A DNA stretch of 64,000 bases, from positions 1-64,000 of the IMG/VR virus record IMGVR_UViG_3300027896_005002; one strand, 5' to 3'. Numbering within the stretch: position 1 is the first letter of the stretch; each line of letters opens with the position of its first letter. The notes under the pieces are model-generated. The model made no database searches. It was given only the letters and a program-made list of their open reading frames with translations, and had not been told where the DNA came from. Shown here in pieces: positions 3,001 through 64,000 of this stretch. Both the position numbers and the translations under genes were made by a program.

Positions 3001-5843
3001 TTTGTTATTTGACCAAACATATTATTATTAGCATCATAACTAATAACAATATATTGTCCTGAAATTAATGACAATCCCAAATCAACTGTAAAGGTCTGAA
3101 TTCCCAAATTAATCGTCATTGTATCTGATGATGATGTATTATATTTATCCGATTTTCCTGAATAACCTGACAATCCTGAATAACCTGAAAGACCAGATGA
3201 CCCTGACAAACCACTTATTCCAGAATAACCTGACCGACCAGAATAACCCGATTGTCCTGAATATCCACTAAATCCTGAATTTCCACTGTATCCTGAAGCA
3301 GCCTGTCCTGAATACCCAGATTGACCTTGACTACCCATTTGACCAGAATATCCCGAATTTCCTGAATATCCTGATGATCCAGGATTATCACCTGAAAAAC
3401 CTGATAGTCCACTATATCCTGATCCTCCTGAATATCCACTCTGTCCAGAATATCCACTTCTACCTGAATAACCTGATGATCCTGACAGTCCACTATATCC
3501 TGAAGCAGCCTGTCCAGAATATCCTGAAATTCCTATTCCTGAATATCCTGAAACTCCACTATATCCTGACGTTCCTGACATACCAGAATATCCTGATTGT
3601 CCTGAATAACCTGATGATCCAGGATTATCACCACTAAATCCTGAAACTCCACTATACCCTGAAGAACCACTCAGTCCAGAATAACCACTAATACCTGAAT
3701 ATCCACTTATGCCAGAATAACCACTATTGCCGGATTGTCCAGAATACCCTGACATTCCAGAATATCCACTTATACCAAAACCAGAATATCCTGATGTTCC
3801 AGAATATCCTGAAACACCAGAACCACTATATCCTGAAACACCAGAATAACCACTGCGTCCTGAAGTTCCTGATAATCCACTATAACCAGAAATTCCTGAA
3901 CTTCCAGAATAACCTGAAAATCCTGATTGACCTGAATATCCACTTACACCACTATATCCCGAAACACCAGAATAACCAGAAATTCCTGAATAACCTGATG
4001 TGCCACTTCCACTATAACCTGACTTTCCTGACCATCCACTCATTCCACTATAACCACTAATTCCAAAATCCCCAGAATAACCACTATATCCTGAAATGCC
4101 TGAATAGCCTGAAATACCGCTATATCCCGAAAATCCTGATAATCCTGATCGACCACTATAGCCAGAACTTCCTGAATTACCGCTACCACCACTATATCCT
4201 GAAACTCCAGAATACCCTGATTGTCCAGAATAACCTGATACTCCAGAATACCCTGAATATCCACTCCGTCCACTATAACCGGATTGTCCTGAATAACCTG
4301 AATTACCAATAGCACCAGAATAACCTGATGTTCCACTATACCCCGAATATCCTGAAGTCCCTGAATATCCAGAATAACCGCTTCTACCACTATATCCGCT
4401 TCTACCACTATATCCTGATTGACCTGAATATCCGCTACTTCCAGATATTCCAGAATATCCTGATGTTCCACTACCTGATATTCCTGAATAACCTGAATAT
4501 CCACTTCTACCACTATACCCTGAACCACCGGAATAACCACTATTTCCTATTGCACCAGAATATCCACTACTTCCCGATATTCCAGATTGTCCAGACAATC
4601 CACTATATCCTGATTGTCCACTCAGTCCTGATCGTCCCGAATATCCACTTATACCTGAATATCCTGATTCTCCGTCAATACCATCAATACCTGAATATCC
4701 TGAATTTCCAGAAGCCCCAGAATATCCACTTAAACCTGGCCTACCTGACCATCCACTTATTCCACTTCCTGATGCCCCTGAATATCCACTTAAACCTGAA
4801 TAACCTGAACGACCACTATATCCACTTACTCCAGAATATCCTGAAATTCCCGAATATCCTGACAATCCACTATAACCTGATTGTCCACTTAATCCTGATC
4901 TTCCAGAATAACCACTTATTCCTGTAGGTCCAGGAGCAGCACTTAATGACACATTCCAATTACTATATGTTCCAGAACCAATAATTGACGTTACATTAAC
5001 TACGAAATAACCATTTACAGGATTGTAAACAACAACATTGCCTTTCATACTATTACTTGCATCATAAACTATTAAAATTTCTTGACCAATTGAATACGCT
5101 AATTGTGTGCCAATTGTTAATGTTTGAGATCCTGTACCAATTGTTAGAGTCGATGATGATGTTGTTGTGTATCTATCACCCATTATTCCAGAATATCCAC
5201 TATACCCAGAATATCCAGAATATCCACTATGATTGACAATAATTTCTCTTCTACGAGGAAAATGTTGAGCAAAACTATAAACTTCAACGTGAATTAAATC
5301 ACTGTTACCATGTTGATCAATACCAAAAAACTTTAATACTGTATTTGTATTAATAATAATTGGTGAAACATATAGAATTGAAGCTATAGTTGGTACAGAT
5401 CCATCTAATGTATAATAAATACTTGTATTTTGTTTGTCAGAAGTTAACGTTATTTCTTGTGTAGAAACGAACGTTCCTCCGTGAGGAATTGCAATTACAT
5501 GAGGTTTTACAGTATCAGTCGTTACAATTGCAAATGAATAATTATCAGTGTATATAACATTAAGACCATCTTTGACATTAGAATCTATAGTAATAGTTGA
5601 TGCTACAGGAAATAAATTTGTATGTGCTATATAAACATTATATCCATGAACTACAGGTGTAATTGTTCCTGAATAAATAGGCGACTGAAATACACCGTCA
5701 ATAATAGCATCTATAGAATTTATTTTGACATTCAAAGTTGTTATAAGAATTGTTGTGTCAGTGCGAATTTCAAAATATACAGGCGATGTTTCTGGAACGC
5801 CTGTTGCACCTGAATCTGGTGATCTACTTTGGAAAGTTATCAT
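3..5843 (-). CDS. Giant virion fibre-like protein (>1947 aa, open at window edge): N-terminal Ig-like and Fn3-associated/chitobiase C-terminal-like domain, then Gly-X-Ser (mostly GYS) triplet repeats interrupted by five ~75-aa beta-rich domains
   Basis: Absent from the ORF track because it has no stop in the window. ATG at 5843 follows AAGGA and reads MITFQSRSPDSGATGVPETSPVYF...GGTFVSTQEITLTSDKQNTSIYYTLDGSVPT...SGYSGYSG. The same frame still reads GLSGYSGI at positions 26 to 3. Confidence 0.9.
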   Translation of the reverse strand, partial: MITFQSRSPDSGATGVPETSPVYFEIRTDTTILITTLNVKINSIDAIIDGVFQSPIYSGTITPVVHGYNVYIAHTNLFPVASTITIDSNVKDGLNVIYTDNYSFAIVTTDTVKPHVIAIPHGGTFVSTQEITLTSDKQNTSIYYTLDGSVPTIASILYVSPIIINTNTVLKFFGIDQHGNSDLIHVEVYSFAQHFPRRREIIVNHSGYSGYSGYSGYSGIMGDRYTTTSSSTLTIGTGSQTLTIGTQLAYSIGQEILIVYDASNSMKGNVVVYNPVNGYFVVNVTSIIGSGTYSNWNVSLSAAPGPTGISGYSGRSGLSGQSGYSGLSGYSGISGYSGVSGYSGRSGYSGLSGYSGASGSGISGWSGRPGLSGYSGASGNSGYSGIDGIDGESGYSGISGYSGRSGLSGQSGYSGLSGQSGISGSSGYSGAIGNSGYSGGSGYSGRSGYSGYSGISGSGTSGYSGISGSSGYSGQSGYSGRSGYSGRSGYSGYSGTSGYSGYSGTSGYSGAIGNSGYSGQSGYSGRSGYSGYSGVSGYSGQSGYSGVSGYSGGSGNSGSSGYSGRSGLSGFSGYSGISGYSGISGYSGYSGDFGISGYSGMSGWSGKSGYSGSGTSGYSGISGYSGVSGYSGVSGYSGQSGFSGYSGSSGISGYSGLSGTSGRSGYSGVSGYSGSGVSGYSGTSGYSGFGISGYSGMSGYSGQSGNSGYSGISGYSGISGYSGLSGSSGYSGVSGFSGDNPGSSGYSGQSGYSGMSGTSGYSGVSGYSGIGISGYSGQAASGYSGLSGSSGYSGRSGYSGQSGYSGGSGYSGLSGFSGDNPGSSGYSGNSGYSGQMGSQGQSGYSGQAASGYSGNSGFSGYSGQSGYSGRSGYSGISGLSGSSGLSGYSGLSGYSGKSDKYNTSSSDTMTINLGIQTFTVDLGLSLISGQYIVISYDANNNMFGQITNYNNGSGLLTVNVDTIQGSGTYSNWLVSIEGQKGYSGYSGRSGYSGFSGSGVSGYSGQIGISGYSGIGTSGYSGISGYSGVSGYSGISGYSGRSGYSGMSGYSGVGTSGYSGVGTSGYSGTIGESGYSGSIGSSGYSGISGYSGMSGYSGMSGYSGVGTSGYSGEIGVSGYSGIGTSGYSGISGYSGLSGYSGISGYSGVGTSGYSGVGTSGYSGISGYSGDSGISGYSGISGFSGDNPGSSGYSGQSGYSGVSGFSGDNPGSSGYSGQSGYSGVSGYSGEVGVSGYSGEVGVSGYSGTIGASGYSGIGISGYSGQSGYSGSSGYSGISSNFYGTSTTSMTISLLTQSFVLDGANSLSFTVGQRVSISYSANLNNYMQGSITVYSHPNMTVSVSNISGSGSFASWIIFLQGQQGVSGSQGQSGISGYSGVGTSGYSGIGTSGYSGASGYSGESGYSGIGSSGMSGYSGISGYSGQSGYSGELGVSGYSGRSGYSGRSGYSGLSGHSGYSGLSGYSGVSGFSGDNPGSSGYSGQSGYSGVSGFSGDNPGSSGYSGISGFSGDNPGSSGYSGQSGYSGISGLSGYSGISSNFYGTSTTSMTISFLTQSFVLDGANSLSFTVGQRVSISYSVNLNNYMQGSITAYSHPNMTVSVSNISGSGSFASWIIFLQGQQGVSGSQGQSGYSGISGYSGLGYSGYSGISGYSGLGYSGYSGLGVSGYSGISGYSGLGVSGYSGFSGDNPGSSGYSGISGYSGASGYSGSSGYSGDSGSSGYSGELGQSGYSGNSGYSGISGYSGQSGYSGISGYSGLGTSGYSGLEGDRYTTSSTTTLTIGTGVQNLTVEAGLALSIGQTIIIAYDSSNKMEGSISSYDFGTGSLVVNITLTTGSGTYSTWEVALSGAPGPSGPQGISGYSGHSGYSGISGYSGQSGYSGVGTSGYSGQSGYSGEGASGYSGISGYSGQGSSGYSGQSGYSGISGYSGQSGYSGIGTSGYSGLSGYSGI
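961..2033. repeat. Near-identical ~299-bp in-frame duplication (961-1259 and 1735-2033) inside the fibre gene
   Basis: Both copies start CCGGATTGTCCTTGACTTCCTGATACACC and end AACTTATTCCACTATATCC. The 774-nt offset is a multiple of 3, with only a few substitutions. Confidence 0.9.
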
Positions 5844-5845
5844 AT

Positions 5846-6283
5846 TTAATCCTTAATTGCAAAAATATCATTAAAAGCCTGAATTAGTCTGTCTTCCAGT
5901 GATGACAAAATATATTTGTCATACAATTTTTTTTGAATTGCTAGCCAATCAATATTACAAACTTTATCATCAAACAAATGATCATAATAAATTTTTCTAC
6001 TAGTATTAAATGACAAAAAAGGCGCATTTTCATTAATTGTATGAATTTTGATATCATTTGCATTTAAGAAATCTAGTGCATTTTGTAGTACCTGACCACT
6101 TCGACATGTCCATAAAATAGTGTGAAAATTATCGTAAATCCAGTTTATAACTTCTTTTGCATATGGAAGTAAAACAAAATTCTTACTATGAACGTCTTCA
6201 TTCAATTGAACAATCGTGCCGTCAAAATCAATTGAAATAATAATTCTGTGTGTGTCTTTAAACAAATTTCCATTTGTATCCAT
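5846..6283 (-). CDS. HAD-superfamily hydrolase (small phage HAD phosphatase-like)
   Basis: Motif I ISIDFDGTIV, motif II ILWTCR, motif III/IV RKIYYDHLFDDK. Probable start is ATG 6283 (MDTNG) rather than 6331. Confidence 0.8.
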   Translation of the reverse strand: MDTNGNLFKDTHRIIISIDFDGTIVQLNEDVHSKNFVLLPYAKEVINWIYDNFHTILWTCRSGQVLQNALDFLNANDIKIHTINENAPFLSFNTSRKIYYDHLFDDKVCNIDWLAIQKKLYDKYILSSLEDRLIQAFNDIFAIKD

Positions 6284-56588: not shown

Positions 56589-58499
56589 TTAAAATAATCC
56601 TTCGCTAGCTAACCTTGCAACAAAAGCTTCTGTATTATCATAAGTTTCTACATTGCCATTTTTATCAACAATATACTCTTCAAGTACAGGTTGACCATTT
56701 TCTTCTTTATAATTAGTCTTTATTGTAATATAACCATCACCTTGCTTTACAGTGTCAACTGTTGAATAACTTTTGTTTGATTCAGCAAAAGTTACCTCAG
56801 GCATTGTAATAACTTCATCAAAAATATCATCTACTACTTGAGCAATCCTTTCATTAACTGATGATTTCTTTTTCTTCTTCTTGTCTTCTTTATAATGAGG
56901 TTCTGGCTTCTTCGTTAATTTTCCACCAGGACCCCATTTTTCACCAGGTTTCTTTTTTGACATCCACCAACTATTATGAACAAAAACACCTGCATCTAAA
57001 GCAAAATTATGATACTTATCAACCGTAAAATCATAGACATCTTCTTTAACATCAAGTACTTTTGCACTAACAACTTTATGATTAATTTTTAATTGGTACT
57101 TTTTCTCTGTTTCAAAAATAAGATTATCTAAAGTACCAAAAGTTTTGATAGCAGTACAAAAATCAGGATTGTTAATTGAATGTCTATGTTCATCCCATGT
57201 ATTTTCATTAATTGGTAAATTAGCTTCAATAATTCTTTTTGTTACTTTCATTGATTTTGCTTTTACCATATTACCAAATTTAAATTTTTCATCTACATTA
57301 ATTTTAATTTGATCAACTGTACCAAAGTGTAAAATTGCTGTAGAAAAAGATGGATTACTTTTGTATCCCATATGCTCAAACCATGTATTTTCATTAATTG
57401 ACAACCCATAATCCATTATTCTTTTTGCTATCCTCAAAATTTTTGATTTTGTAATCGTGCCATCAATATTTCTTTCTCTAATAGCTTCAATTGCTTCTTC
57501 AGATTCATTATATTTTCCTAAAGCAATTTTTCCAGCTTCAGCACCTAACATTCCATTTTCCTTACAGTTTTTAATTTGCTCACCGCGATGCTTTTGCCAC
57601 AATAATTTCATATTACGTCTTCCAATAATAGACGCCATTATTCGACCTTCTTCAGACTTATTATATTCAATTAGATATTTTGCACAATCAGCTCTACGAT
57701 GAAGTATTGAATGTTCACTACCAGTAAGTAATTTGATATTATTTGGATGGTTATTATCTTTATTAAAATCGTCATGATGATTAATAAAACCTCTTGTCCA
57801 TTCTTTACCAAACTTCATCTTAGCAACAAGTCTATGAACAAAATGTTTTTTTCCATCATTCGACCAACATCGTTTATAACCGTCACAAAAACTTCCTTCA
57901 TATCTATCAAAATAAATCGGCATCAAAGATTCATTACATTGCAAATTCTGAGCTTCTTTATAAGAACCATCAATTAACATAAACTTATGATTTTTAGTAC
58001 ATCTAATTGATTGTCCATTATCAAGAATAATCTCAATAAGCTCAGCATTATTAATTGTTTTATGAAAATTAAATGCTTTTCCTACAACAATTTTATTTTG
58101 ATCAACATCAAAAGAATAAACAAATGTTTCTTTATCTATACCAAATTCATCAACTAATTGTTTTATTGATAACACTCTTCCATCCAACAGTGGTACTTTA
58201 GTATCACCAGTAAAACACAATGCCCAAGGATTTGTAATATTCTTGTGCTTTTTCATTGCACGTGTTGTTCCTCCCCATCCTGGAGGAGATACAGCTACTT
58301 TTTCGTTTGCCAATACTTCACTGGCAACACGATCAATATTTTCATTCATACTACCTCTCCTTAAACGATTCTTAAATTGTTCCTCGATTAGTTCTTTACC
58401 ATCACTCGGCAAATCAACAAATCTCTTCTCTAACTGATCATGTCCATTTTCGGCATAATCAGTTCGTTCACGTAATGGCTGTAACTTCTCGTCTAACAT
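56589..58499 (-). CDS. Intein-containing precursor of a ~221-aa probable head protein
   Basis: Exteins join as ...MKKHKNITNPWAL|SWWMSKKKPG... Confidence 0.8.
   Translation of the reverse strand: MLDEKLQPLRERTDYAENGHDQLEKRFVDLPSDGKELIEEQFKNRLRRGSMNENIDRVASEVLANEKVAVSPPGWGGTTRAMKKHKNITNPWALCFTGDTKVPLLDGRVLSIKQLVDEFGIDKETFVYSFDVDQNKIVVGKAFNFHKTINNAELIEIILDNGQSIRCTKNHKFMLIDGSYKEAQNLQCNESLMPIYFDRYEGSFCDGYKRCWSNDGKKHFVHRLVAKMKFGKEWTRGFINHHDDFNKDNNHPNNIKLLTGSEHSILHRRADCAKYLIEYNKSEEGRIMASIIGRRNMKLLWQKHRGEQIKNCKENGMLGAEAGKIALGKYNESEEAIEAIRERNIDGTITKSKILRIAKRIMDYGLSINENTWFEHMGYKSNPSFSTAILHFGTVDQIKINVDEKFKFGNMVKAKSMKVTKRIIEANLPINENTWDEHRHSINNPDFCTAIKTFGTLDNLIFETEKKYQLKINHKVVSAKVLDVKEDVYDFTVDKYHNFALDAGVFVHNSWWMSKKKPGEKWGPGGKLTKKPEPHYKEDKKKKKKSSVNERIAQVVDDIFDEVITMPEVTFAESNKSYSTVDTVKQGDGYITIKTNYKEENGQPVLEEYIVDKNGNVETYDNTEAFVARLASEGLF
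56973..58217 (-). mobile_element. Intein (415 aa) with HNH homing endonuclease
   Basis: N-terminal CFTGDTKV, block B IRCTKNHKF, C-terminal VYDFTVDKYHNFALDAGVFVHN followed by Ser+1; HNH motif VHRLVA...HHDDFNKDNN..NIKLL..SEHSILH. Confidence 0.92.
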
Positions 58500-58880: not shown

Positions 58881-59888
58881 ATGAACCATCTAGCAACTAT
58901 TCAATCTGAATTCGTTAAAGAAGCTCGTAAGTGGAAAGATCTAACTTATGACGAACAAAAAGGCTATTTAAAAAGACATCCTAGAACAAAAAGAAAATTG
59001 ACTGCTAAACCCGATGGTTCTTCTACAAGTCAAGAATCTTCACAAGCTGCTGGATCAGACGACGAATCTACAAAAAATAAAATTCTTAACATGACATATG
59101 CAGATTTTGCTGAAAAATTGTCTGGTCAATCAAAGTCTTCTATAAAAGATAGAATTGAAAAATTACAATTCAAAATGGATAGAACACAAGCAGCAGCTGC
59201 ACGTAGAGAACAACGAGCACAAGGAGACTTAGATGGTACAGCTTTTGAAGCAGCATATGAAAGAAATCGACCACTAGAAATTGAACAAAAATTACTTAAA
59301 CATTTTCTAGAACATGGTAATAAAAAACTACCTCCAGAATTACAACAAGAATTTGATGAAGTTAACAAACACAAACAACGACATTCCGAGTATAAACAAG
59401 AACAAAAAACAGAAAAAGAAAAACATGCACATCTAATTGGTAAAAAAATTACTTGGATATCATCAAAATATCACGGTCAAGAGATGTCTGGCATTGTCAT
59501 TGGTATAAAATCTGGCCGACATGGCGGTATTATGGCAAAAACAGACACTGGTTGGAGAGTGCCTATTAGCTTAATTAAATCAACATCTGGTTCATCTAAT
59601 GTTGAAAAAAATAAAGAAAAAGTCGAACAAAATCTTGTCAAGGCAAAAGATTTAATTGGCAAAAACATCACTTGGAAATCTAAATTCACACCTGGTAAAC
59701 GACATTTTAGAAACATGCCAGGTGCATATATGATAAAACAACCACCTCCAGGCTATGATTCTGAAAAAGGCACAGCTAGCGGAAAAGTCACAGAAGCCAG
59801 AGGTTCAAAAGTCGTAGTTGGTGGTTGGAGAATACCTTTAGCACTTATTCACGAAGTTGATGGTAAAAAATTCTCAAAATGGAAATAA
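58881..59888 (+). CDS. Hypothetical protein with shared N-terminal leader/module and two SH3-like repeats
   Basis: AGGAG RBS; LIGK.ITW...SG.V...GWR(V/I)P..LI occurs twice. Confidence 0.7.
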   Translation: MNHLATIQSEFVKEARKWKDLTYDEQKGYLKRHPRTKRKLTAKPDGSSTSQESSQAAGSDDESTKNKILNMTYADFAEKLSGQSKSSIKDRIEKLQFKMDRTQAAAARREQRAQGDLDGTAFEAAYERNRPLEIEQKLLKHFLEHGNKKLPPELQQEFDEVNKHKQRHSEYKQEQKTEKEKHAHLIGKKITWISSKYHGQEMSGIVIGIKSGRHGGIMAKTDTGWRVPISLIKSTSGSSNVEKNKEKVEQNLVKAKDLIGKNITWKSKFTPGKRHFRNMPGAYMIKQPPPGYDSEKGTASGKVTEARGSKVVVGGWRIPLALIHEVDGKKFSKWK

Positions 59889-59955
59889 ATATTATACTTC
59901 GATTTCAAACATGATTAGAAAATTTTATAGATATAAATTATTGTAAGATCATTCT

Positions 59956-60300
59956 ATGAATTTGACTGTCATATCAAAATTTTGGCATGAGATAGAACAA
60001 CTACTCATAGCAGTTGAACAACATCTCGGAGTTTGTAATCATGTTTACTTTGCAAGCGGCACATTAATAATTGATAAAGTAAATAAAATAATAGATAATA
60101 ATATAATAGGAACTGGCGTATTAGGAAGTGGTATAATCGGGCTTAATCTTAATGGAAAAGGTTTTATTACTCACAATCCTGAATTACAATATTTTAAAAA
60201 CAATAGAATTTATCAACCTCAACATATTACAATATTAGTACGAAAAATTTACCTTGACATTAAAGGTGAAACTAAATTTTATAAAAAAGAAACTGAATAA
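59956..60300 (+). CDS. Hypothetical protein
   Basis: ORF only. Confidence 0.45.
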   Translation: MNLTVISKFWHEIEQLLIAVEQHLGVCNHVYFASGTLIIDKVNKIIDNNIIGTGVLGSGIIGLNLNGKGFITHNPELQYFKNNRIYQPQHITILVRKIYLDIKGETKFYKKETE

Positions 60301-60368
60301 TTCTTTTATAATTGGACAATCTTTGATTTTAAGCTTGATTATTTTAATAATAAATAAGGACTATAAAA

Positions 60369-60434
60369 ATGTTAACACTTCGACAGACACAACCGCAGCA
60401 ACCCCGTCAACCACGGAGTAATATGCTCATGTGA
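60369..60434 (+). CDS. Attenuator leader peptide MLTLRQTQPQQPRQPRSNMLM
   Basis: AAGGA RBS at 60356-60360, ATG 60369, TGA 60432-60434; 11 of 12 consecutive codons are Arg/Gln/Pro. Confidence 0.8.
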   Translation: MLTLRQTQPQQPRQPRSNMLM

Positions 60435-60494
60435 GACTGTCGAATTATAAATAAATAAAAAAGGTCTCACATGAAAATGTTGAGGCCTTTTTTT
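60379..60494 (+). promoter_or_regulatory. Ribosome-dependent transcription attenuator (1:2, 2:3 antiterminator, 3:4 terminator)
   Basis: TTCGACAG (60379-86) pairs with CTGTCGAA (60437-44); TCATGTGAGACT (60427-38) pairs with GGTCTCACATGA (60463-74); terminator hairpin at 60463-60487. Confidence 0.8.
60457..60494 (+). terminator. Intrinsic terminator of the attenuator
   Basis: GGTCTCACAT-GAAA-ATGTTGAGGCC followed by T7. Confidence 0.85.
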
Positions 60495-60516
60495 ATGACC
60501 AAAAGAAAGTGAGACA

Positions 60517-60849
60517 ATGCAAACATCTTATTTTGCAAAATCAGCAAAAGATAAAAACGCCATATCAATAGCATTGAAAAGTCCAGACTGGTTTGAAGGC
60601 AAAGAATATAAGAAGTTAGCACCAAAATATTGGTTACTTAAAAAATATAAAGACGATGGTAATGAAGAATTTTATACAATACAATACCAGAAAGAGGTCC
60701 TAGATCTATTAGATCCTAAACAGGTATATGAAGAACTAGGAGAGAATGCAATTTTATTATGTTGGGAAAAATCTGGAAAATTCTGTCACAGACGCTTAGT
60801 AGCAAAGTGGTTTAAAGAAAAATTAGGAATAGAAATTAAAGAATTATAA
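60517..60849 (+). CDS. DUF488-family protein
   Basis: TSYFA, ISIA..SP.WF, LAPK, LLCWEKSGKFCHRRLVAKW. Confidence 0.75.
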   Translation: MQTSYFAKSAKDKNAISIALKSPDWFEGKEYKKLAPKYWLLKKYKDDGNEEFYTIQYQKEVLDLLDPKQVYEELGENAILLCWEKSGKFCHRRLVAKWFKEKLGIEIKEL

Positions 60850-60857
60850 ATATTTGT

Positions 60858-60933
60858 CCAGGTGTCGCCTAGTGGTTAGGGCACTACATTTGGGATGTAG
60901 ATATCGTGCGTTCAACTCGCACCACCTGGACCA
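60858..60933 (+). tRNA. tRNA-Pro(UGG)
   Basis: Acceptor CCAGGTG/CACCTGG, anticodon arm CTACA-TT-TGG-GA-TGTAG, encoded CCA. Confidence 0.93.
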
Positions 60934-61007
60934 TCTTAATCTTAATTTTAGTGAGGCGTATGGTTTAATAATCAGTTTATAACGTTCATATCTAAAAAGG
61001 AGACGAT

Positions 61008-61985
61008 ATGAACTTAAAAACTGAACGAAATCTAACTATAGTTCAACTTCAACAATCAAAGATTACTTGTAACAAATGTAATAGATCAATTAGTAAAGCA
61101 AATTTTGATAAACATGTATGTTTAAGTGAAACTAATCCAAATATTAAAAGTATTAGAAATCTATATAATGATGGTTTATCATTACGAAAAATAATAAAAG
61201 AGGGTTTTAATGAACAATATGTTAAATTTGTACTTAAAGGTTGTAAAAGGTCTCCAAGTGAAGCTGGCAAGTTAGCACATAAAAAATATCCTGAATCTTT
61301 TAAATTATCAGAAGAAACAAAAGAAATATTAAGACAAAAACGTGTAGCTTACTTAAAACAAAATACTGGAACATCTGCATTTCAGCGACGACAAAATGGT
61401 AAAATGAGTTATGGCGAACAAAAATTACATGATTTATTTGTTAAAAATGATATATACAAAAAATATGATGTCGTAAATGAATATTGCGAACATCCATATT
61501 TTTTAGACTTTGCTTTTGTTAATGAAAAAGTAGATGTAGAATTTGATGGACATTGGCATTTTACAGAAAAACGACAACAATTTGATAAAAAACGAGATAA
61601 ATATTTACAGCAAAAAGGTTGGAGTATATATAGAATAACATATTATCAACTCGATAATTTTAATATCAATGAATTAATAAATTTTATTGGTGATGCTAAA
61701 AACAAATATTATAAATATGATTTAGTAAAATATTATGAAATTAAAAAACAAAAGCACAAAGAAAAAAAAATTAAAAAGTTACAACAAAGAGTAATAATTA
61801 ACAATAAAATTGATGCACAAAAAAATAAAAAGATACAGGATAAATTACAATTACTTTCTACAATAGATATGACAAAATTTGGTTGGGTTGAAAAAGCATC
61901 AGATTTATTAAATATAACACATACATCTGTAAGACGGTTTGTAAATAAACATTATAAAAAAGAATTTTTTAGACGAAAAAAATAA
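61008..61985 (+). CDS. Vsr/DUF559-type endonuclease, probable free-standing homing endonuclease
   Basis: SYGEQKL...YFLDFAF...VEFDGHWH...DKKRDKYLQQKGWSIYRI; NUMOD3-like LSEETKEILR. Confidence 0.8.
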   Translation: MNLKTERNLTIVQLQQSKITCNKCNRSISKANFDKHVCLSETNPNIKSIRNLYNDGLSLRKIIKEGFNEQYVKFVLKGCKRSPSEAGKLAHKKYPESFKLSEETKEILRQKRVAYLKQNTGTSAFQRRQNGKMSYGEQKLHDLFVKNDIYKKYDVVNEYCEHPYFLDFAFVNEKVDVEFDGHWHFTEKRQQFDKKRDKYLQQKGWSIYRITYYQLDNFNINELINFIGDAKNKYYKYDLVKYYEIKKQKHKEKKIKKLQQRVIINNKIDAQKNKKIQDKLQLLSTIDMTKFGWVEKASDLLNITHTSVRRFVNKHYKKEFFRRKK

Positions 61986-61990
61986 TTTAC

Positions 61991-62067
61991 GAGGGTGTCG
62001 CCTAGCGGTCTAGGGCAACGGTTTTTGAAGCCGTCATTCGGTGGTTCAAATCCATCCACCCTTGCCA
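61991..62067 (+). tRNA. tRNA-Gln(UUG)
   Basis: GAGGGTG/CACCCTT acceptor, ACGGT-TT-TTG-AA-GCCGT, TTCAAAT loop, CCA. Confidence 0.9.
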
Positions 62068-62071
62068 TTAT

Positions 62072-62150
62072 CGGAGTGTAGGCTAGACTGGTTTAGGCCA
62101 CATGCTTCGGGAGCATGTTCTCAGCAGTTCAAATCTGCTCACTCCGACCA
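62072..62150 (+). tRNA. tRNA-Pro(CGG)
   Basis: CGGAGTG/CACTCCG, CATGC-TT-CGG-GA-GCATG, CCA. Confidence 0.93.
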
Positions 62151-62154
62151 AATT

Positions 62155-62226
62155 TGGGGTGTAATTCAGTCGTAGAATGCATGTCTCTGAAACATGATGT
62201 CGTAGGTTCAACTCCTACCACCCCAG
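62155..62226 (+). tRNA. tRNA-Gln(CUG), CCA not encoded
   Basis: TGGGGTG/CACCCCA, CATGT-CT-CTG-AA-ACATG. Confidence 0.9.
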
Positions 62227-62233
62227 TAAATTC

Positions 62234-62310
62234 GGGCCTGTAGCTCAGCTGTATAGAGTGCGTGTCTTCGAAACACGATGTCGTCAGTTAAAATCTGACC
62301 AGGCCCACCA
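62234..62310 (+). tRNA. tRNA-Arg(UCG)
   Basis: GGGCCTG/CAGGCCC, CGTGT-CT-TCG-AA-ACACG, atypical T-loop TTAAAAT, CCA. Confidence 0.88.
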
Positions 62311-62323
62311 ATTAGGAGATTCC

Positions 62324-63175
62324 ATGGAAAGTATAGACAATTGTCATAATTGTACAAAATGTATTTTACTAGATAGTAAATACTGTTATAAAGATTGTAA
62401 GACTTGTAAATCAAAATTCTTATGCTTTACATTTAGTCGAAATAATGAAATTAGTATTTGCTTCGTTGACACAGCTGATAAAAATTATATTGGTACAAGG
62501 AATTCAATACAATTGGGTTTATTAGATGAAGCAATTTTTTCAACATCTCAAACTATAGAAAAATATCTGAAATCTATCTTATTATATAATAATAATGACA
62601 TCCGTAAAATGGGCGGAAGAAATGGCCATAATATTTTAGATTTGAAAAAAGAAGCACAAAAATGTTTAAATGGATTTGATTTAGATATAACTTATACTGT
62701 AGGAAAAACAAAATATTCTTTTTATGAAATAATCGACAAAAATGTTGACCGTTATGGTATAATTTCAGCACCAAACTTTCCTTTTTTATCTTTATTAGAT
62801 GATGCAGTTTTTAAAATTCGTCCTTATTGTAGAGACATAGATCTTGAAGCTTTAGTTTATAAAATAGATAAATTAGAAGTTTTGGAAATGATTCCAATTA
62901 ATAAATCAATTGGAGGTTATTTAGAAGAAATCATTAAATTTAAACCGACATCGTTTAATAATAAACTTTCATTGCAAAAAAAATGTCTTTATTGGGAAAA
63001 TAAACATACTTTAGCAAGTGGAACGCAAACAATTCCAAACATAAAAAAATTTGGTGAACATTTATATTGGCCAAAATGTTCAAAATGTTTAAATAATTGG
63101 CGAGAAAATCATTATAAAGTAACGCAAATTCAAAAAGAATATTTAAAAACTTTAGACTATAAAATGTGCCTATAG
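62324..63175 (+). CDS. HEPN-domain-like protein with Cys-rich N-terminus
   Basis: AGGAG RBS then ATG 62324; EAIFSTSQTIEKYLKSILL...GHNILDL pattern. Confidence 0.65.
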   Translation: MESIDNCHNCTKCILLDSKYCYKDCKTCKSKFLCFTFSRNNEISICFVDTADKNYIGTRNSIQLGLLDEAIFSTSQTIEKYLKSILLYNNNDIRKMGGRNGHNILDLKKEAQKCLNGFDLDITYTVGKTKYSFYEIIDKNVDRYGIISAPNFPFLSLLDDAVFKIRPYCRDIDLEALVYKIDKLEVLEMIPINKSIGGYLEEIIKFKPTSFNNKLSLQKKCLYWENKHTLASGTQTIPNIKKFGEHLYWPKCSKCLNNWRENHYKVTQIQKEYLKTLDYKMCL

Positions 63176-63242
63176 CTGAGTTGGATACAGCACCAGATTG
63201 CGAATCTGGAGGTCAGTGGTTCGAATCCACTTAGGCACACCA
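63166..63242 (+). tRNA. tRNA-Arg(GCG)
   Basis: GTGCCTA/TAGGCAC, CCAGA-TT-GCG-AA-TCTGG, TTCGAAT, CCA. Confidence 0.93.
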
Positions 63243-63302
63243 TTAATATAATAAAGCAAAATGAATGCGAATCAACAAATAATTCTCTTAAGGAGGTCTA
63301 CG

Positions 63303-63803
63303 ATGGAATGTGCTACTCTTTTACAAATATGTTCTACTCTTATACAAATATGTGCCACTATTTTTATAGGACTTCTTGCTTTAAAAATTCAGAGAAAAAT
63401 ATTAAAAGCGCATAAAGAAAAATTACACAGTGATTCTTTTGATAGAAAATATAAAATTTTTGATGAAACTATTGAATATATGCGTTCTGTCGTGAATTAT
63501 AATTGGAAAGAAAAAAAATCTAATGAATTTTTTTATGAGAATATTTTATTTAGACAGAGAACAATAACTAAAGCAAAATTTCTTTTTTCAGATGAAGTAA
63601 CAAGTTTTATGGAAAAGATTGCAAACATTGCTAGTGATTTAAACATTCTTCATGATCAAAAAGAACAACTTGGTTCAAATGTACTTGCATTTAACTCTAA
63701 AGAAACTGTAGGCATGGAAATTATAACAAAGACCAAAGAATTTCATAATCAATTTAAAATTTATCAAGAAATTTTTTCTGCTTCTTTAAAAGGCGACAGA
63801 TAA
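63303..63803 (+). CDS. Membrane-anchored hypothetical protein
   Basis: AAGGAGG precedes ATG 63303; N-terminal hydrophobic helix. Confidence 0.6.
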   Translation: MECATLLQICSTLIQICATIFIGLLALKIQRKILKAHKEKLHSDSFDRKYKIFDETIEYMRSVVNYNWKEKKSNEFFYENILFRQRTITKAKFLFSDEVTSFMEKIANIASDLNILHDQKEQLGSNVLAFNSKETVGMEIITKTKEFHNQFKIYQEIFSASLKGDR

Positions 63804-63820
63804 TTAGTTCTTTGTTTAAA

Positions 63821-63849
63821 CGTAGGTTCAAATCCTACCTGGGACACCA
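63821..63849 (+). pseudogene. Orphan tRNA 3' fragment (T-arm, acceptor strand, CCA)
   Basis: C-GTAGG-TTCAAAT-CCTAC-CTGGGAC-A-CCA, with no complementary GTCCCAG 5' strand upstream. Confidence 0.75.
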
Positions 63850-63851
63850 TT

Positions 63852-64000
63852 ATGAAAAACACTGGCTTTTCTGAAATAACTACTGAACGACTTTACTATA
63901 ATAGTCAAGATCCTTGGTACATGGAAGTCGCTATTACTGGTCGTTGCAATTTTTCATGTAAATATTGCAATAGATTCAATAATGATATTGATCTTGCAAA
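63852..64000 (+). CDS. Radical SAM protein, 5' part (runs off window)
   Basis: MKNTGFSEITTERLYYNSQDPWYMEVAITGRCNFSCKYCNRF contains CxxxCxxC. Confidence 0.8.
   Translation, partial: MKNTGFSEITTERLYYNSQDPWYMEVAITGRCNFSCKYCNRFNNDIDLA

What the first reader, a model, noticed from the sequence alone, without database searches (positions are those of the whole stretch)
60381..60416. Leader samples isoacceptors one by one and predicts missing tRNA genes
Seen: the control run uses three different Arg codons (CGA, CGT, CGG), three different Pro codons (CCG, CCC, CCA) and both Gln codons, including GC-rich codons unexpected in this AT-rich genome. CGA, CAG, CAA, CCG and CCA have exact anticodon partners in the array, and CGT is read by Arg-GCG through wobble. 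CCC and CGG have no exact partner in the window. Inference: the sensor monitors individual tRNA species rather than amino-acid supply, and tRNA-Pro(GGG) and tRNA-Arg(CCG) may lie further downstream or have been lost. All monitored codons start with C (anticodon G36), which hints at one threat directed at this tRNA class.
Basis: partly seen in the sequence, partly recalled or inferred. Interest (0 to 1): 0.75.

Follow-up and report, generated by a model that had tools for sequence, protein, structure and literature searches.

The report
Codon-matched leaders controlling phage tRNA genes
A giant freshwater phage places a tiny gene in front of each block of its tRNA genes, written in the codons those tRNAs read and joined to an on/off RNA switch; this looks like a previously undescribed way for a virus to make replacement tRNAs only when they run short.

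Summary
Codons 5-16 (60381-60416) of a 21-codon ORF (60369-60434) are CGA CAG ACA CAA CCG CAG CAA CCC CGT CAA CCA CGG. The six tRNA genes downstream are Pro-UGG, Gln-UUG, Pro-CGG, Gln-CUG, Arg-UCG and Arg-GCG.

The ORF is the leader of a trp-type attenuator. It has a 1:2 hairpin, an antiterminator whose 5' arm spans the stop codon, and a terminator followed by seven T. The design is general. I found 17 leader-terminator-tRNA units in 7 related phage genomes, including all four tRNA blocks of this 416-kb genome. Each leader is enriched in codons read by its own block.

The match goes beyond amino acids. Of 74 informative synonymous codons, 61 are readable by the unit's own tRNAs, against 35.5 expected.

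No tRNA-Pro(GGG) or tRNA-Arg(CCG) exists in the record. Wobble by UGG and UCG can read CCC and CGG. Two relatives do carry both genes in the homologous block, so loss is possible. The "all codons start with C" idea fails, because relatives monitor AGG with tRNA-Arg(CCU).

No literature, Rfam family or GenBank phage matched. I rate it a new variant of leader-peptide attenuation with tRNA genes as the output. No expression data exist.

The parts
60323..60351 (+). Candidate promoter (TTGATT, 17-nt spacer, AATAAT). It contains the 8-mer TGATTATT, which is shared with unit 2b and with L094. Not established.
   Evidence: Consensus scan and comparison of upstream regions. Inference only.
60356..60360 (+). 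Shine-Dalgarno AAGGA, 8 nt before the ATG.
   Evidence: An SD-like motif precedes all 13 leaders tabulated.
60369..60434 (+). Leader ORF of 21 codons plus a TGA stop.
   Evidence: It is 97% identical in variant L094, whereas the neighbouring DUF488 gene is 84% identical.
60381..60416 (+). Control run of 12 codons; 11 are Arg(CGN), Gln or Pro codons.
60379..60391 (+). Region 1: the 5' arm of the 1:2 hairpin. It overlaps the first control codons.
   Evidence: hairpin 60379-60444, -22.8 kcal/mol, z -4.7.
60427..60444 (+). Region 2. Bases 60430-60444 pair with region 1, and 60427-60438 form the antiterminator 5' arm. It spans the stop codon.
60463..60474 (+). Region 3: the 3' arm of the antiterminator, which is also the 5' arm of the terminator.
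   Evidence: antiterminator hairpin -18.0 kcal/mol, z -6.9. Covariation (92.7% of cells paired, 9 compensatory cells).
60457..60494 (+). Intrinsic terminator: a stem-loop followed by seven T (60488-60494).
   Evidence: -18.0 kcal/mol, z -6.5. (90.5% paired, 6 pairs with compensatory change). 100% identical in L094.
60517..60849 (+). DUF488 ORF lying between the attenuator and the first tRNA. This arrangement is seen only in this lineage.
   Evidence: Pfam PF22751/PF04343. Its context is not conserved in relatives.
60858..60933 (+). tRNA-Pro(UGG)
61008..61985 (+). DUF559/Vsr-like homing-endonuclease ORF inside the block.
   Evidence: A homologous ORF sits at the same place in L092.
61991..62067 (+). 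tRNA-Gln(UUG)
62072..62150 (+). tRNA-Pro(CGG)
62154..62227 (+). tRNA-Gln(CUG)
62234..62310 (+). tRNA-Arg(UCG). It reads CGA, and CGG by U:G wobble.
   Evidence: The wobble rule is established knowledge.
62321..63175 (+). ORF with a weak HEPN-like match, inside the block.
   Evidence: E 2.9e-4, below Pfam's cut-off.
63166..63242 (+). tRNA-Arg(GCG). It reads CGU and CGC. Its acceptor stem matches the Arg-ACG or Arg-GCG tRNA that ends the block in relatives.

Best explanation
The 36 bases are the control codons of a leader-peptide transcription attenuator of the trp type. It gates transcription into a phage tRNA block: Pro-UGG, Gln-UUG, Pro-CGG, Gln-CUG, Arg-UCG and Arg-GCG, together with the protein genes embedded among them.

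Proposed mechanism (inferred):
- When charged tRNAs for these codons are plentiful, the ribosome runs to the TGA at 60432. There it covers region 2, the terminator 60457-60494 forms, and transcription stops.
- When any of these tRNAs is scarce, the ribosome stalls inside 60381-60416. Region 2 stays free and pairs with region 3 (60427-60438 with 60463-60474). The terminator cannot form, and the tRNA genes are transcribed.
- Without translation, the 1:2 hairpin holds region 2 and termination is the default.

The output is the very tRNAs that read the control codons, so the circuit is a product-feedback supply controller for tRNA. Synonymous codons are chosen so that the codon boxes served by the block are each sampled. 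CCC and CGG are read by wobble (UGG and UCG). They may also be left over from an ancestral block that held Pro-GGG and Arg-CCG.

Shown: the anatomy, its conservation, covariation of the helices, and the codon-anticodon match. Inferred: stalling, read-through, and the physiological trigger.
For: Anatomy in the window:
- SD, ORF, 1:2 hairpin (-22.8 kcal/mol, z -4.7), antiterminator (-18.0, z -6.9) and terminator (-18.0, z -6.5) with a T7 tail.
- The stop codon lies inside the antiterminator 5' arm.

Conservation:
- Homologous P/Q/R leaders lie directly upstream of Pro/Gln(/Arg) tRNAs in G012, G013, G014, L085 and L092, and in variant L094.
- Antiterminator: 92.7% of cells paired, 4 pairs and 9 cells with compensatory change, slid controls 24-48%.
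- Terminator: 90.5% paired, with 6 covarying pairs.
- Window versus L094: leader 97%, region 2 100% and terminator 100% identical. The loop between them is 20% identical and the DUF488 gene 84%.

Generality:
- The same layout precedes the three other tRNA blocks of this genome and the blocks of G001, G013 and G014.
- In all 13 units tested, the stop codon sits at an antiterminator arm that pairs with the terminator 5' arm (z -2.7 to -7.8).
- In 14 of 16 measured units the first tRNA starts 15-85 nt after the terminator.

Codon match:
- In each of the 16 units scored, the leader is enriched in codons readable by its own block (z 1.6 to 10; 13 of 16 below p 0.03).
- The true leader-block pairing ranks first of 24, 6, 24 and 6 permutations in the four genomes with three or more units.
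- At the synonymous level, 61 of 74 informative codons are readable against 35.5 expected. This includes 41 of 53 against 26.1 expected outside the P/Q/R class.
- All codons readable and all tRNA species sampled: p 0.011 (window), 0.031, 0.0011, 0.0008 and 0.042 in five P/Q/R leaders.

Context: a PTH2 peptidyl-tRNA hydrolase follows on the same strand.
Against: - There are no expression data. No RNA run was listed for this DNA.
- The host, the RNA polymerase and the promoter are unknown.
- Units in different genomes are homologous, so the pooled p-values overstate independence.
- Matching is imperfect. ACA (Thr) sits inside the run. G014 uses AGA although its block has CCU. G013 keeps AGG and AGA without any Arg tRNA.
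- Every P/Q/R leader has a CCC or CCT codon whether or not a GGG tRNA is present, and both Gln codons whether or not a CUG tRNA is present.
- In the folded leader, 9 of the 12 wobble bases of the run are paired. The wobble bases of CCC and CGG pair with each other (C60404-G60416), so RNA structure may contribute to these two choices.
- The design is absent from a more distant tRNA-rich phage, G009.
Confidence: 0.72

Rival explanations
1. The attenuator is real, but the particular synonymous codons are fixed by RNA pairing and by descent rather than by selection to sample each isoacceptor. The switch would then sense Pro, Gln and Arg decoding only in general.
For: - In the predicted 1:2 hairpin, 9 of the 12 wobble bases of the run are paired. 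C60404 of CCC pairs with G60416 of CGG, and CGU 60405-07 pairs with ACG 60413-15.
- Every P/Q/R leader has a CCC or CCT codon whether or not a Pro-GGG tRNA is present, and both Gln codons whether or not a Gln-CUG tRNA is present.
- The motif CAACCA is invariant in the seven aligned leaders.
Against: - Arg codons change between relatives in step with the Arg anticodons; 20 of 21 are readable against 9.4 expected.
- CGG is present only where a CGG reader is present, in 6 of 6 genomes.
- Leaders of the other, non-P/Q/R classes show the same effect: Ser AGY with Ser-GCU, UCN with Ser-UGA/CGA, and ACG with Thr-CGU. There, 41 of 53 informative codons are readable against 26.1 expected.
- The mini-helix inside the run was not recovered in the three-sequence consensus fold.
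Confidence: 0.15
2. It is a classical amino-acid-supply attenuator. Pro, Gln and Arg are all made from glutamate, so the leader would report glutamate or nitrogen shortage and control the embedded protein genes (DUF488, endonuclease, PTH2). The tRNAs would be passengers.
For: - Pro, Gln and Arg form the glutamate biosynthetic family (established biochemistry).
- In the window the first gene after the terminator is a protein gene, DUF488.
- A leader cannot tell an uncharged tRNA from a missing one.
Against: - In 14 of 16 measured units, tRNA genes begin 15-85 nt after the terminator, with no protein gene between.
- DUF488 lies behind the attenuator only in this lineage.
- The amino-acid sets of the other leaders (Phe/Asn/Ser/Cys, His/Met, Met/Thr/Ile/Ala/Val) follow tRNA content, not biosynthetic families.
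- The matching operates at the level of synonymous codons.
Confidence: 0.07
3. There is no regulation. The hairpin is simply the terminator of the upstream gene, and the short ORF is a chance reading frame.
For: Short ORFs and terminators are common in AT-rich intergenic DNA. The simple terminator scan did not list this site.
Against: - The run is the unique best window of 831,988 in the genome.
- The ORF, its SD and the three helices are conserved, with compensatory changes, in six other genomes.
- The element is more conserved than the flanking genes.
- Seventeen units share the layout and match their own blocks.
Confidence: 0.03

Closest known systems
Leader-peptide transcription attenuators of amino-acid operons (trp, his, leu, thr, ilv, pheA of enterobacteria)
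   Same: Both have a short translated leader with a run of regulatory codons, 1:2, 2:3 and 3:4 alternative helices, a stop codon placed so that a terminating ribosome masks region 2, and an intrinsic terminator with a U tract. Like the thr and ilv leaders, this one monitors several amino acids at once.
   Different: Here the regulated genes are tRNA genes, so the sensed molecule is the product itself. The element is viral. One genome holds several units, and each unit's codon set is tailored to its own tRNA block, down to codon boxes. There is no sequence membership: the best Rfam match is Thr_leader at 21.7 bits against a cut-off of 55.
pheST attenuator (pheM leader) of E. coli
   Same: It is a leader-peptide attenuator in front of a translation-apparatus gene rather than a biosynthetic one (own knowledge).
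   Different: It controls an aminoacyl-tRNA synthetase, uses a single amino acid, and is bacterial. The E. coli tRNA-Phe gene pheV itself has only a promoter and no leader.
T-box riboswitches
   Same: Both make a transcription read-through decision that depends on the state of a specific tRNA, defined by a codon-like specifier.
   Different: A T-box binds uncharged tRNA directly, without a ribosome. It has a stem I, a specifier loop and the T-box sequence. No T-box family matched, and here the codons lie in a translated ORF with an SD.
Phage tRNA genes as replacements for tRNAs cut by host defences (PMC11555353, PMC12445682; T4 versus PrrC from own knowledge)
   Same: Both involve phage tRNA blocks that keep translation going when host tRNAs are depleted. 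This gives the attenuator a plausible trigger.
   Different: Those studies concern what the tRNAs do. None describes a sensor that switches phage tRNA genes on, and no such report was found in nine literature searches.

Membership tests
Ribosome-mediated (leader-peptide) transcription attenuator | Short ORF with a start codon and SD, upstream of the regulated genes on the same strand | tested here: met
   AAGGA at 60356-60360, ATG at 60369, 21 codons. SD-like motifs precede all 13 leaders tabulated.
Ribosome-mediated (leader-peptide) transcription attenuator | Cluster of regulatory codons related to the regulated function | tested here: met
   11 of 12 codons are readable by the six downstream tRNAs, the unique genome-wide maximum. 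Enrichment is seen in all 16 units scored.
Ribosome-mediated (leader-peptide) transcription attenuator | Intrinsic terminator between the leader and the regulated genes | tested here: met
   60457-60494, -18.0 kcal/mol, T7 tail. Covariation.
Ribosome-mediated (leader-peptide) transcription attenuator | Mutually exclusive antiterminator whose 5' arm is masked by a ribosome at the stop codon | tested here: met
   60427-60438 pairs with 60463-60474, and the TGA at 60432 lies inside the arm. This holds in 13 of 13 units. Compensatory changes.
Ribosome-mediated (leader-peptide) transcription attenuator | 1:2 hairpin that sequesters region 2 when the leader is not translated | tested here: met
   In the window it is -22.8 kcal/mol, z -4.7. 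It is present but weaker in relatives (z -1.5 to -3.3) and poorly aligned by MAFFT.
Ribosome-mediated (leader-peptide) transcription attenuator | Read-through rises when the cognate charged tRNA is limiting | not testable with these tools
   No RNA data were listed. A reporter or Term-seq experiment is needed.
Ribosome-mediated (leader-peptide) transcription attenuator | Regulated genes encode amino-acid biosynthesis enzymes or synthetases (the scope of all described members) | tested here: not met
   The regulated genes are tRNA genes. I therefore file this as a new variant of the kind, not as a member of a described family.
Rfam leader families (Thr_leader RF00506 and others) | Score at or above the family's gathering threshold | tested here: not met
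   The best match is 21.7 bits against 55, E 0.81.
T-box riboswitch | Stem I with a specifier loop and the conserved T-box sequence, detectable by the Rfam model | tested here: not met
   No T-box match at E up to 1 in 59800-64000.

The most novel reading that the evidence does not exclude
Giant phages of this clade run a modular tRNA homeostat. Every tRNA block is under product feedback through a leader written in its own codons. Leader codon sets and tRNA gene content co-evolve, so leaders keep a record of gained, lost or anticodon-switched tRNAs. The circuit would act as a sensor that switches on replacement tRNAs when particular host isoacceptors are destroyed or run out during infection, for example through anticodon nucleases.
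Probability: 0.4. Interest if true: 0.92.

Novelty: new variant of a known kind. Interest (0 to 1): 0.85.

Why it matters
Leader-peptide attenuation has been a textbook mechanism for fifty years, but only for amino-acid supply genes and one synthetase. Here the same logic appears to control the supply of tRNAs themselves, in a virus, as separate units that each read out their own products.

If this is confirmed, three things follow:
- It explains how huge phages with near-complete tRNA sets decide when to express them.
- It gives a direct test of whether phage tRNAs are a response to tRNA loss, whether through host defence nucleases, host shut-off or codon mismatch.
- It provides natural, compact, isoacceptor-specific sensors of decoding capacity that could serve as reporters.

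It also offers a comparative rule, that leader codons mirror block anticodons, which can be applied to any phage genome.

Tried and rejected
- Synteny through the DUF488 gene. Fifteen homologous loci were found, but none has a leader upstream of DUF488, so the gene is an insertion here.
- First narrow DNA pattern. It found only the two known relatives and one chance hit in GC-rich coding DNA.
- Second pattern in viral contigs. Of 16 loci, three were known relatives or new finds (G012, G014 and the new L085); the rest were chance hits in coding DNA.
- Metagenome scan. It found six real stretches: two new (L092 and the variant L094), the window's own record, and copies of the G014 and L085 leaders. 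The other six were chance hits.
- Bacterial and archaeal genome scan. All 8 hits were chance matches, so there is no sign of the element in cellular genomes by that pattern.
- Patterns for class II leaders and for the G013 leader N-terminus. They found only genomes already held.
- GenBank phages by blastn. Only tRNA and endonuclease fragments matched.
- The hallmark protein used to find relatives turned out to be a topoisomerase. Its GenBank matches (W01-W03) have few tRNAs and were dropped.
- G009, a complete 276-kb phage with about 20 tRNAs. It has an ordinary promoter directly before its tRNAs and no leader.
- tRNA orthology by pairwise identity. This was inconclusive at 60-70%. Only the acceptor stem links Arg-GCG here to the Arg-ACG or Arg-GCG tRNA that ends the block in relatives.
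- My recollection that E. coli pheV has an attenuator was wrong.
- RNA evidence. One DNA run from a freshwater metagenome holds the region, and no RNA run was listed.
- The full tRNA content of the L092 record could not be listed because the record is not held. Synteny with G012 suggests the block ends at Arg-GCG.
- A Phe/Ser/Cys window scan was uninformative, because T-rich codons are common in this genome.
- The second-best P/Q/R window (220621, minus strand) is a low-complexity stretch of an ordinary protein.

Full report
**1. What is at the coordinates**

The window is the first 64 kb of a 416,029-bp virus record (31% GC, CheckV completeness 77%, from a freshwater metagenome). At 60369-60434 on the plus strand lies a 21-codon ORF. 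An AAGGA motif sits 8 nt upstream of it.

Codons 5-16 occupy exactly 60381-60416 and read cga cag aca caa ccg cag caa ccc cgt caa cca cgg. ARAGORN and Rfam agree on six tRNA genes downstream on the same strand: Pro-UGG, Gln-UUG, Pro-CGG, Gln-CUG, Arg-UCG and Arg-GCG.

The codons are unusual for this genome. AGA makes up 53% of Arg codons yet is absent from the run. CGG is 3% of Arg codons, CCC 7% of Pro, CCG 13% of Pro and CAG 18% of Gln. Among 831,988 twelve-codon windows in all six frames of the genome, the one starting at 60381 is the single richest in codons readable by these six tRNAs.

**2. Anatomy**

The RNA can form three helices:
- Region 1 (60379-60391, the first control codons) pairs with 60430-60444. 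The whole 1:2 hairpin is -22.8 kcal/mol, z -4.7.
- Region 2 (60427-60438, spanning the TGA at 60432) pairs with region 3 (60463-60474). This antiterminator is -18.0 kcal/mol, z -6.9.
- Region 3 also forms the 5' arm of a terminator hairpin (60457-60489, -18.0 kcal/mol, z -6.5) that runs into seven T at 60488-60494.

This is the 1:2 / 2:3 / 3:4 layout of the trp attenuator. A ribosome at the stop codon masks region 2, so the terminator forms. A ribosome stalled in the control run leaves region 2 free to block the terminator.

**3. Relatives**

The DUF488 gene that follows the terminator was a poor guide to relatives, because its context is not conserved. Two of its loci did carry tRNA-Pro and tRNA-Gln, and these were preceded by a homologous leader and switch.

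Pattern scans and a covariance model then found more. In all there are six distinct P/Q/R leaders (this genome, G012, L092, L085, G014 and G013) plus a near-identical variant, L094.

In a seven-sequence alignment:
- The antiterminator is 92.7% paired, with 4 pairs and 9 cells changed on both sides. Slid controls give 24-48%.
- The terminator is 90.5% paired, with 6 covarying pairs.
- A 1:2 helix exists in each sequence (-13 to -17 kcal/mol).

Between the window and L094, the leader is 97% identical and region 2 and the terminator are 100% identical. The loop between them is 20% identical and the neighbouring DUF488 gene 84%. The switch is the most constrained element in the neighbourhood.

**4. 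The design is general in this clade**

The covariance model also hit just upstream of the other two tRNA regions of this genome. Reading those sites, and scanning for strong terminators inside tRNA regions, gave 17 leader-terminator-tRNA units in 7 phage genomes.

This genome has four:
- The P/Q/R unit.
- A 46-codon leader before Lys, Lys, His, Leu, Leu, Ser, Asp, Ser, Met, Glu, Gly, Tyr and Leu.
- A 26-codon leader with a run rich in Val, Met, Ile, Thr and Ala before Met, Thr, Ala, Ile and Val.
- A 28-codon leader with Phe, Ser (AGT AGT AGC) and Cys codons before Phe-GAA, Ser-GCU and two Cys-GCA.

In G013, a leader with four His codons and two Met codons clustered in a nine-codon stretch precedes tRNA-His and tRNA-Met.

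In all 13 units tested, the stop codon lies at an arm that pairs with the terminator 5' arm far better than shuffled sequence does (z -2.7 to -7.8). In 14 of 16 measured units the first tRNA starts 15-85 nt after the terminator. The window, with DUF488 inserted, is one of the two exceptions.

**5. Statistics of the match**

Using whole leaders, which is conservative, each of the 16 units scored is enriched in codons readable by its own block (z 1.6-10). In the four genomes with three or more units, the true leader-block pairing ranks first among all 24, 6, 24 and 6 permutations. The units are homologous between genomes, so the pooled p-values overstate independence. The within-genome permutation test does not have that weakness.

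**6. Isoacceptors or amino acids?**

I held the peptide fixed and drew synonymous codons from genome usage. Of 74 informative codons (the amino acid is served by the block, but not all of its codons are), 61 are readable against 35.5 expected. The breakdown is 41 of 53 against 26.1 expected outside the P/Q/R class, and 20 of 21 Arg codons against 9.4 expected inside it.

Arg tRNAs and leader Arg codons, genome by genome:

| Genome | Arg tRNAs in block | Arg codons in leader |
|---|---|---|
| This genome | UCG, GCG | CGA CGT CGG |
| L092 | CCU, GCG | CGT AGG CGT CGC CGT |
| G012 | CCU, ACG | CGC AGG CGT CGT |
| L085 | CCG, CCU, ACG | CGT AGG CGT CGC CGG |
| G014 | ACG, CCG, CCU | CGC CGA CGG AGA |
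| G013 | none | AGG and AGA only, flanking the run |

CGG appears only where a CGG reader is present, in 6 of 6 genomes. Ser codons are AGY where only Ser-GCU is present and UCN where only UGA/CGA are. ACG appears in the one class I leader whose block holds Thr-CGU. For the window, the joint event "all readable and all six tRNAs sampled" has p about 0.011. For L085, with eight tRNAs all sampled, it is 0.0008.

It has limits. Every P/Q/R leader has a CCC or CCT codon whether or not a Pro-GGG tRNA is present. Both Gln codons occur whether or not a Gln-CUG tRNA is present.

**7. The predicted missing genes**

No tRNA-Pro(GGG) or tRNA-Arg(CCG) exists in the 416-kb record. No tRNA remnant is detectable in 59800-64000.

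Standard wobble makes them unnecessary. Anticodon UCG reads CGA and CGG. Pro-UGG can read all four CCN codons (own knowledge, from work on Salmonella tRNA-Pro cmo5UGG).

However, G014 and L085 carry both Pro-GGG and Arg-CCG in the homologous block. Loss or replacement in this lineage is therefore plausible.

Similar orphan codons occur elsewhere in this genome. There are six Asn codons in the class I leader but no tRNA-Asn gene, and an AGA in the class III leader but no tRNA-Arg(UCU). These tRNAs may be lost, or they may lie in the unsequenced 23%.

One structural caveat applies. In the 1:2 hairpin, the wobble bases of CCC and CGG pair with each other.

**8. The C-first idea**

This idea fails. 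G012, L085 and L092 have AGG in the leader with tRNA-Arg(CCU) in the block. His and Leu(CUN) tRNAs belong to another unit.

An alternative common denominator is that Pro, Gln and Arg are all made from glutamate. I list this as a rival, but it does not explain the other leader classes.

**9. Comparison with what is known**

The anatomy meets every testable defining feature of a leader-peptide attenuator. The exception is the kind of gene regulated. All described members control amino-acid biosynthesis genes or a synthetase.

Rfam gives only a sub-threshold Thr_leader match (21.7 bits against 55) and no T-box match. GenBank phages have no relative. A pattern scan of bacterial genomes gave only chance hits. 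E. coli pheV has no leader.

Nine full-text searches found no report of leader-peptide control of tRNA genes. Papers on phage tRNAs as counter-defence (PMC11555353, PMC12445682) and on huge phages with many tRNAs (PMC7162821) supply a plausible purpose but no sensor.

The design is not universal. G009, a complete 276-kb phage, has a plain promoter before its tRNAs.

**10. Verdict**

The element is best described as a codon-matched leader-peptide attenuator that puts a phage tRNA block under feedback from its own products. This is a new variant of a known mechanism, found so far only in one clade of freshwater huge phages. All functional steps remain inferred until read-through is measured.

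Noticed in passing
G000 90710-90509 (-), 76890-76750 (-), 316407-316262 (-): Three further leader, antiterminator and terminator units precede the other tRNA blocks of the same genome. Each has codons matching its own block: Lys/His/Leu/Ser/Asp/Glu/Gly/Tyr; Met/Thr/Ala/Ile/Val; and Phe/Ser-AGY/Cys.
   Followed up: yes
window 60517-60849: A DUF488 (N3a subclade) gene sits between the attenuator and the first tRNA only in this lineage and in L094. It is therefore placed under the switch. Its role is unknown.
   Followed up: partly
window 61008-61985 and 62321-63175: A DUF559/Vsr-like homing endonuclease ORF and an ORF with a weak HEPN-like match are embedded among the tRNA genes. The second overlaps the start of tRNA-Arg(GCG). 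L092 has a homologous endonuclease ORF at the same position.
   Followed up: partly
window 63852-64000 and G000 64733-65122 (+); G000 70441-70995 (-): A radical SAM gene and a PTH2 peptidyl-tRNA hydrolase follow the tRNA block on the same strand. An RNase T-like exonuclease lies near the next tRNA region. Together they look like a translation-maintenance module.
   Followed up: partly
G014 151440, 158885, 174894; G001 81989, 110035, 110110: Relatives encode suppressor-type tRNAs (anticodons CUA and UUA) and tRNAs with eight-base anticodon loops (CUUG, CUUU). Most of their leaders (five of seven) end in TAG, so a suppressor could in principle alter the switch.
   Followed up: no
G013 148075, 145470 and 131060 (-); window 60336-60343: All three G013 leaders are preceded by a shared promoter-like motif: a long A-rich box with TTGA/TTGC, a 17-nt spacer and TATATT. 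In this genome, unit 1, unit 2b and L094 share TGATTATT about 20 nt before the SD.
   Followed up: partly
G000 316407-316324 (-) and 76890-76813 (-): The class I leader has six Asn codons, but the record holds no tRNA-Asn. The class III leader keeps AGA, but there is no tRNA-Arg(UCU). Relatives have both tRNAs in the matching blocks.
   Followed up: partly
window 63166-63242; L092 (reverse complement) 5956-6032: The tRNA that ends the P/Q/R block has anticodon GCG here and in L092 but ACG in G012 and L085, with a shared acceptor stem. This looks like an A34/G34 switch that would remove the need for inosine formation.
   Followed up: partly
window 56589-58499 (-): The 636-aa ORF looks interrupted by an intein-like insert with an endonuclease-like middle part.
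   Followed up: no
L092 (reverse complement) 4420-4558: The tRNA-Pro after the L092 terminator starts like the G012 tRNA-Pro and then diverges. ARAGORN calls an 82-nt gene. It may carry an insertion or be a rearranged copy.
   Followed up: no
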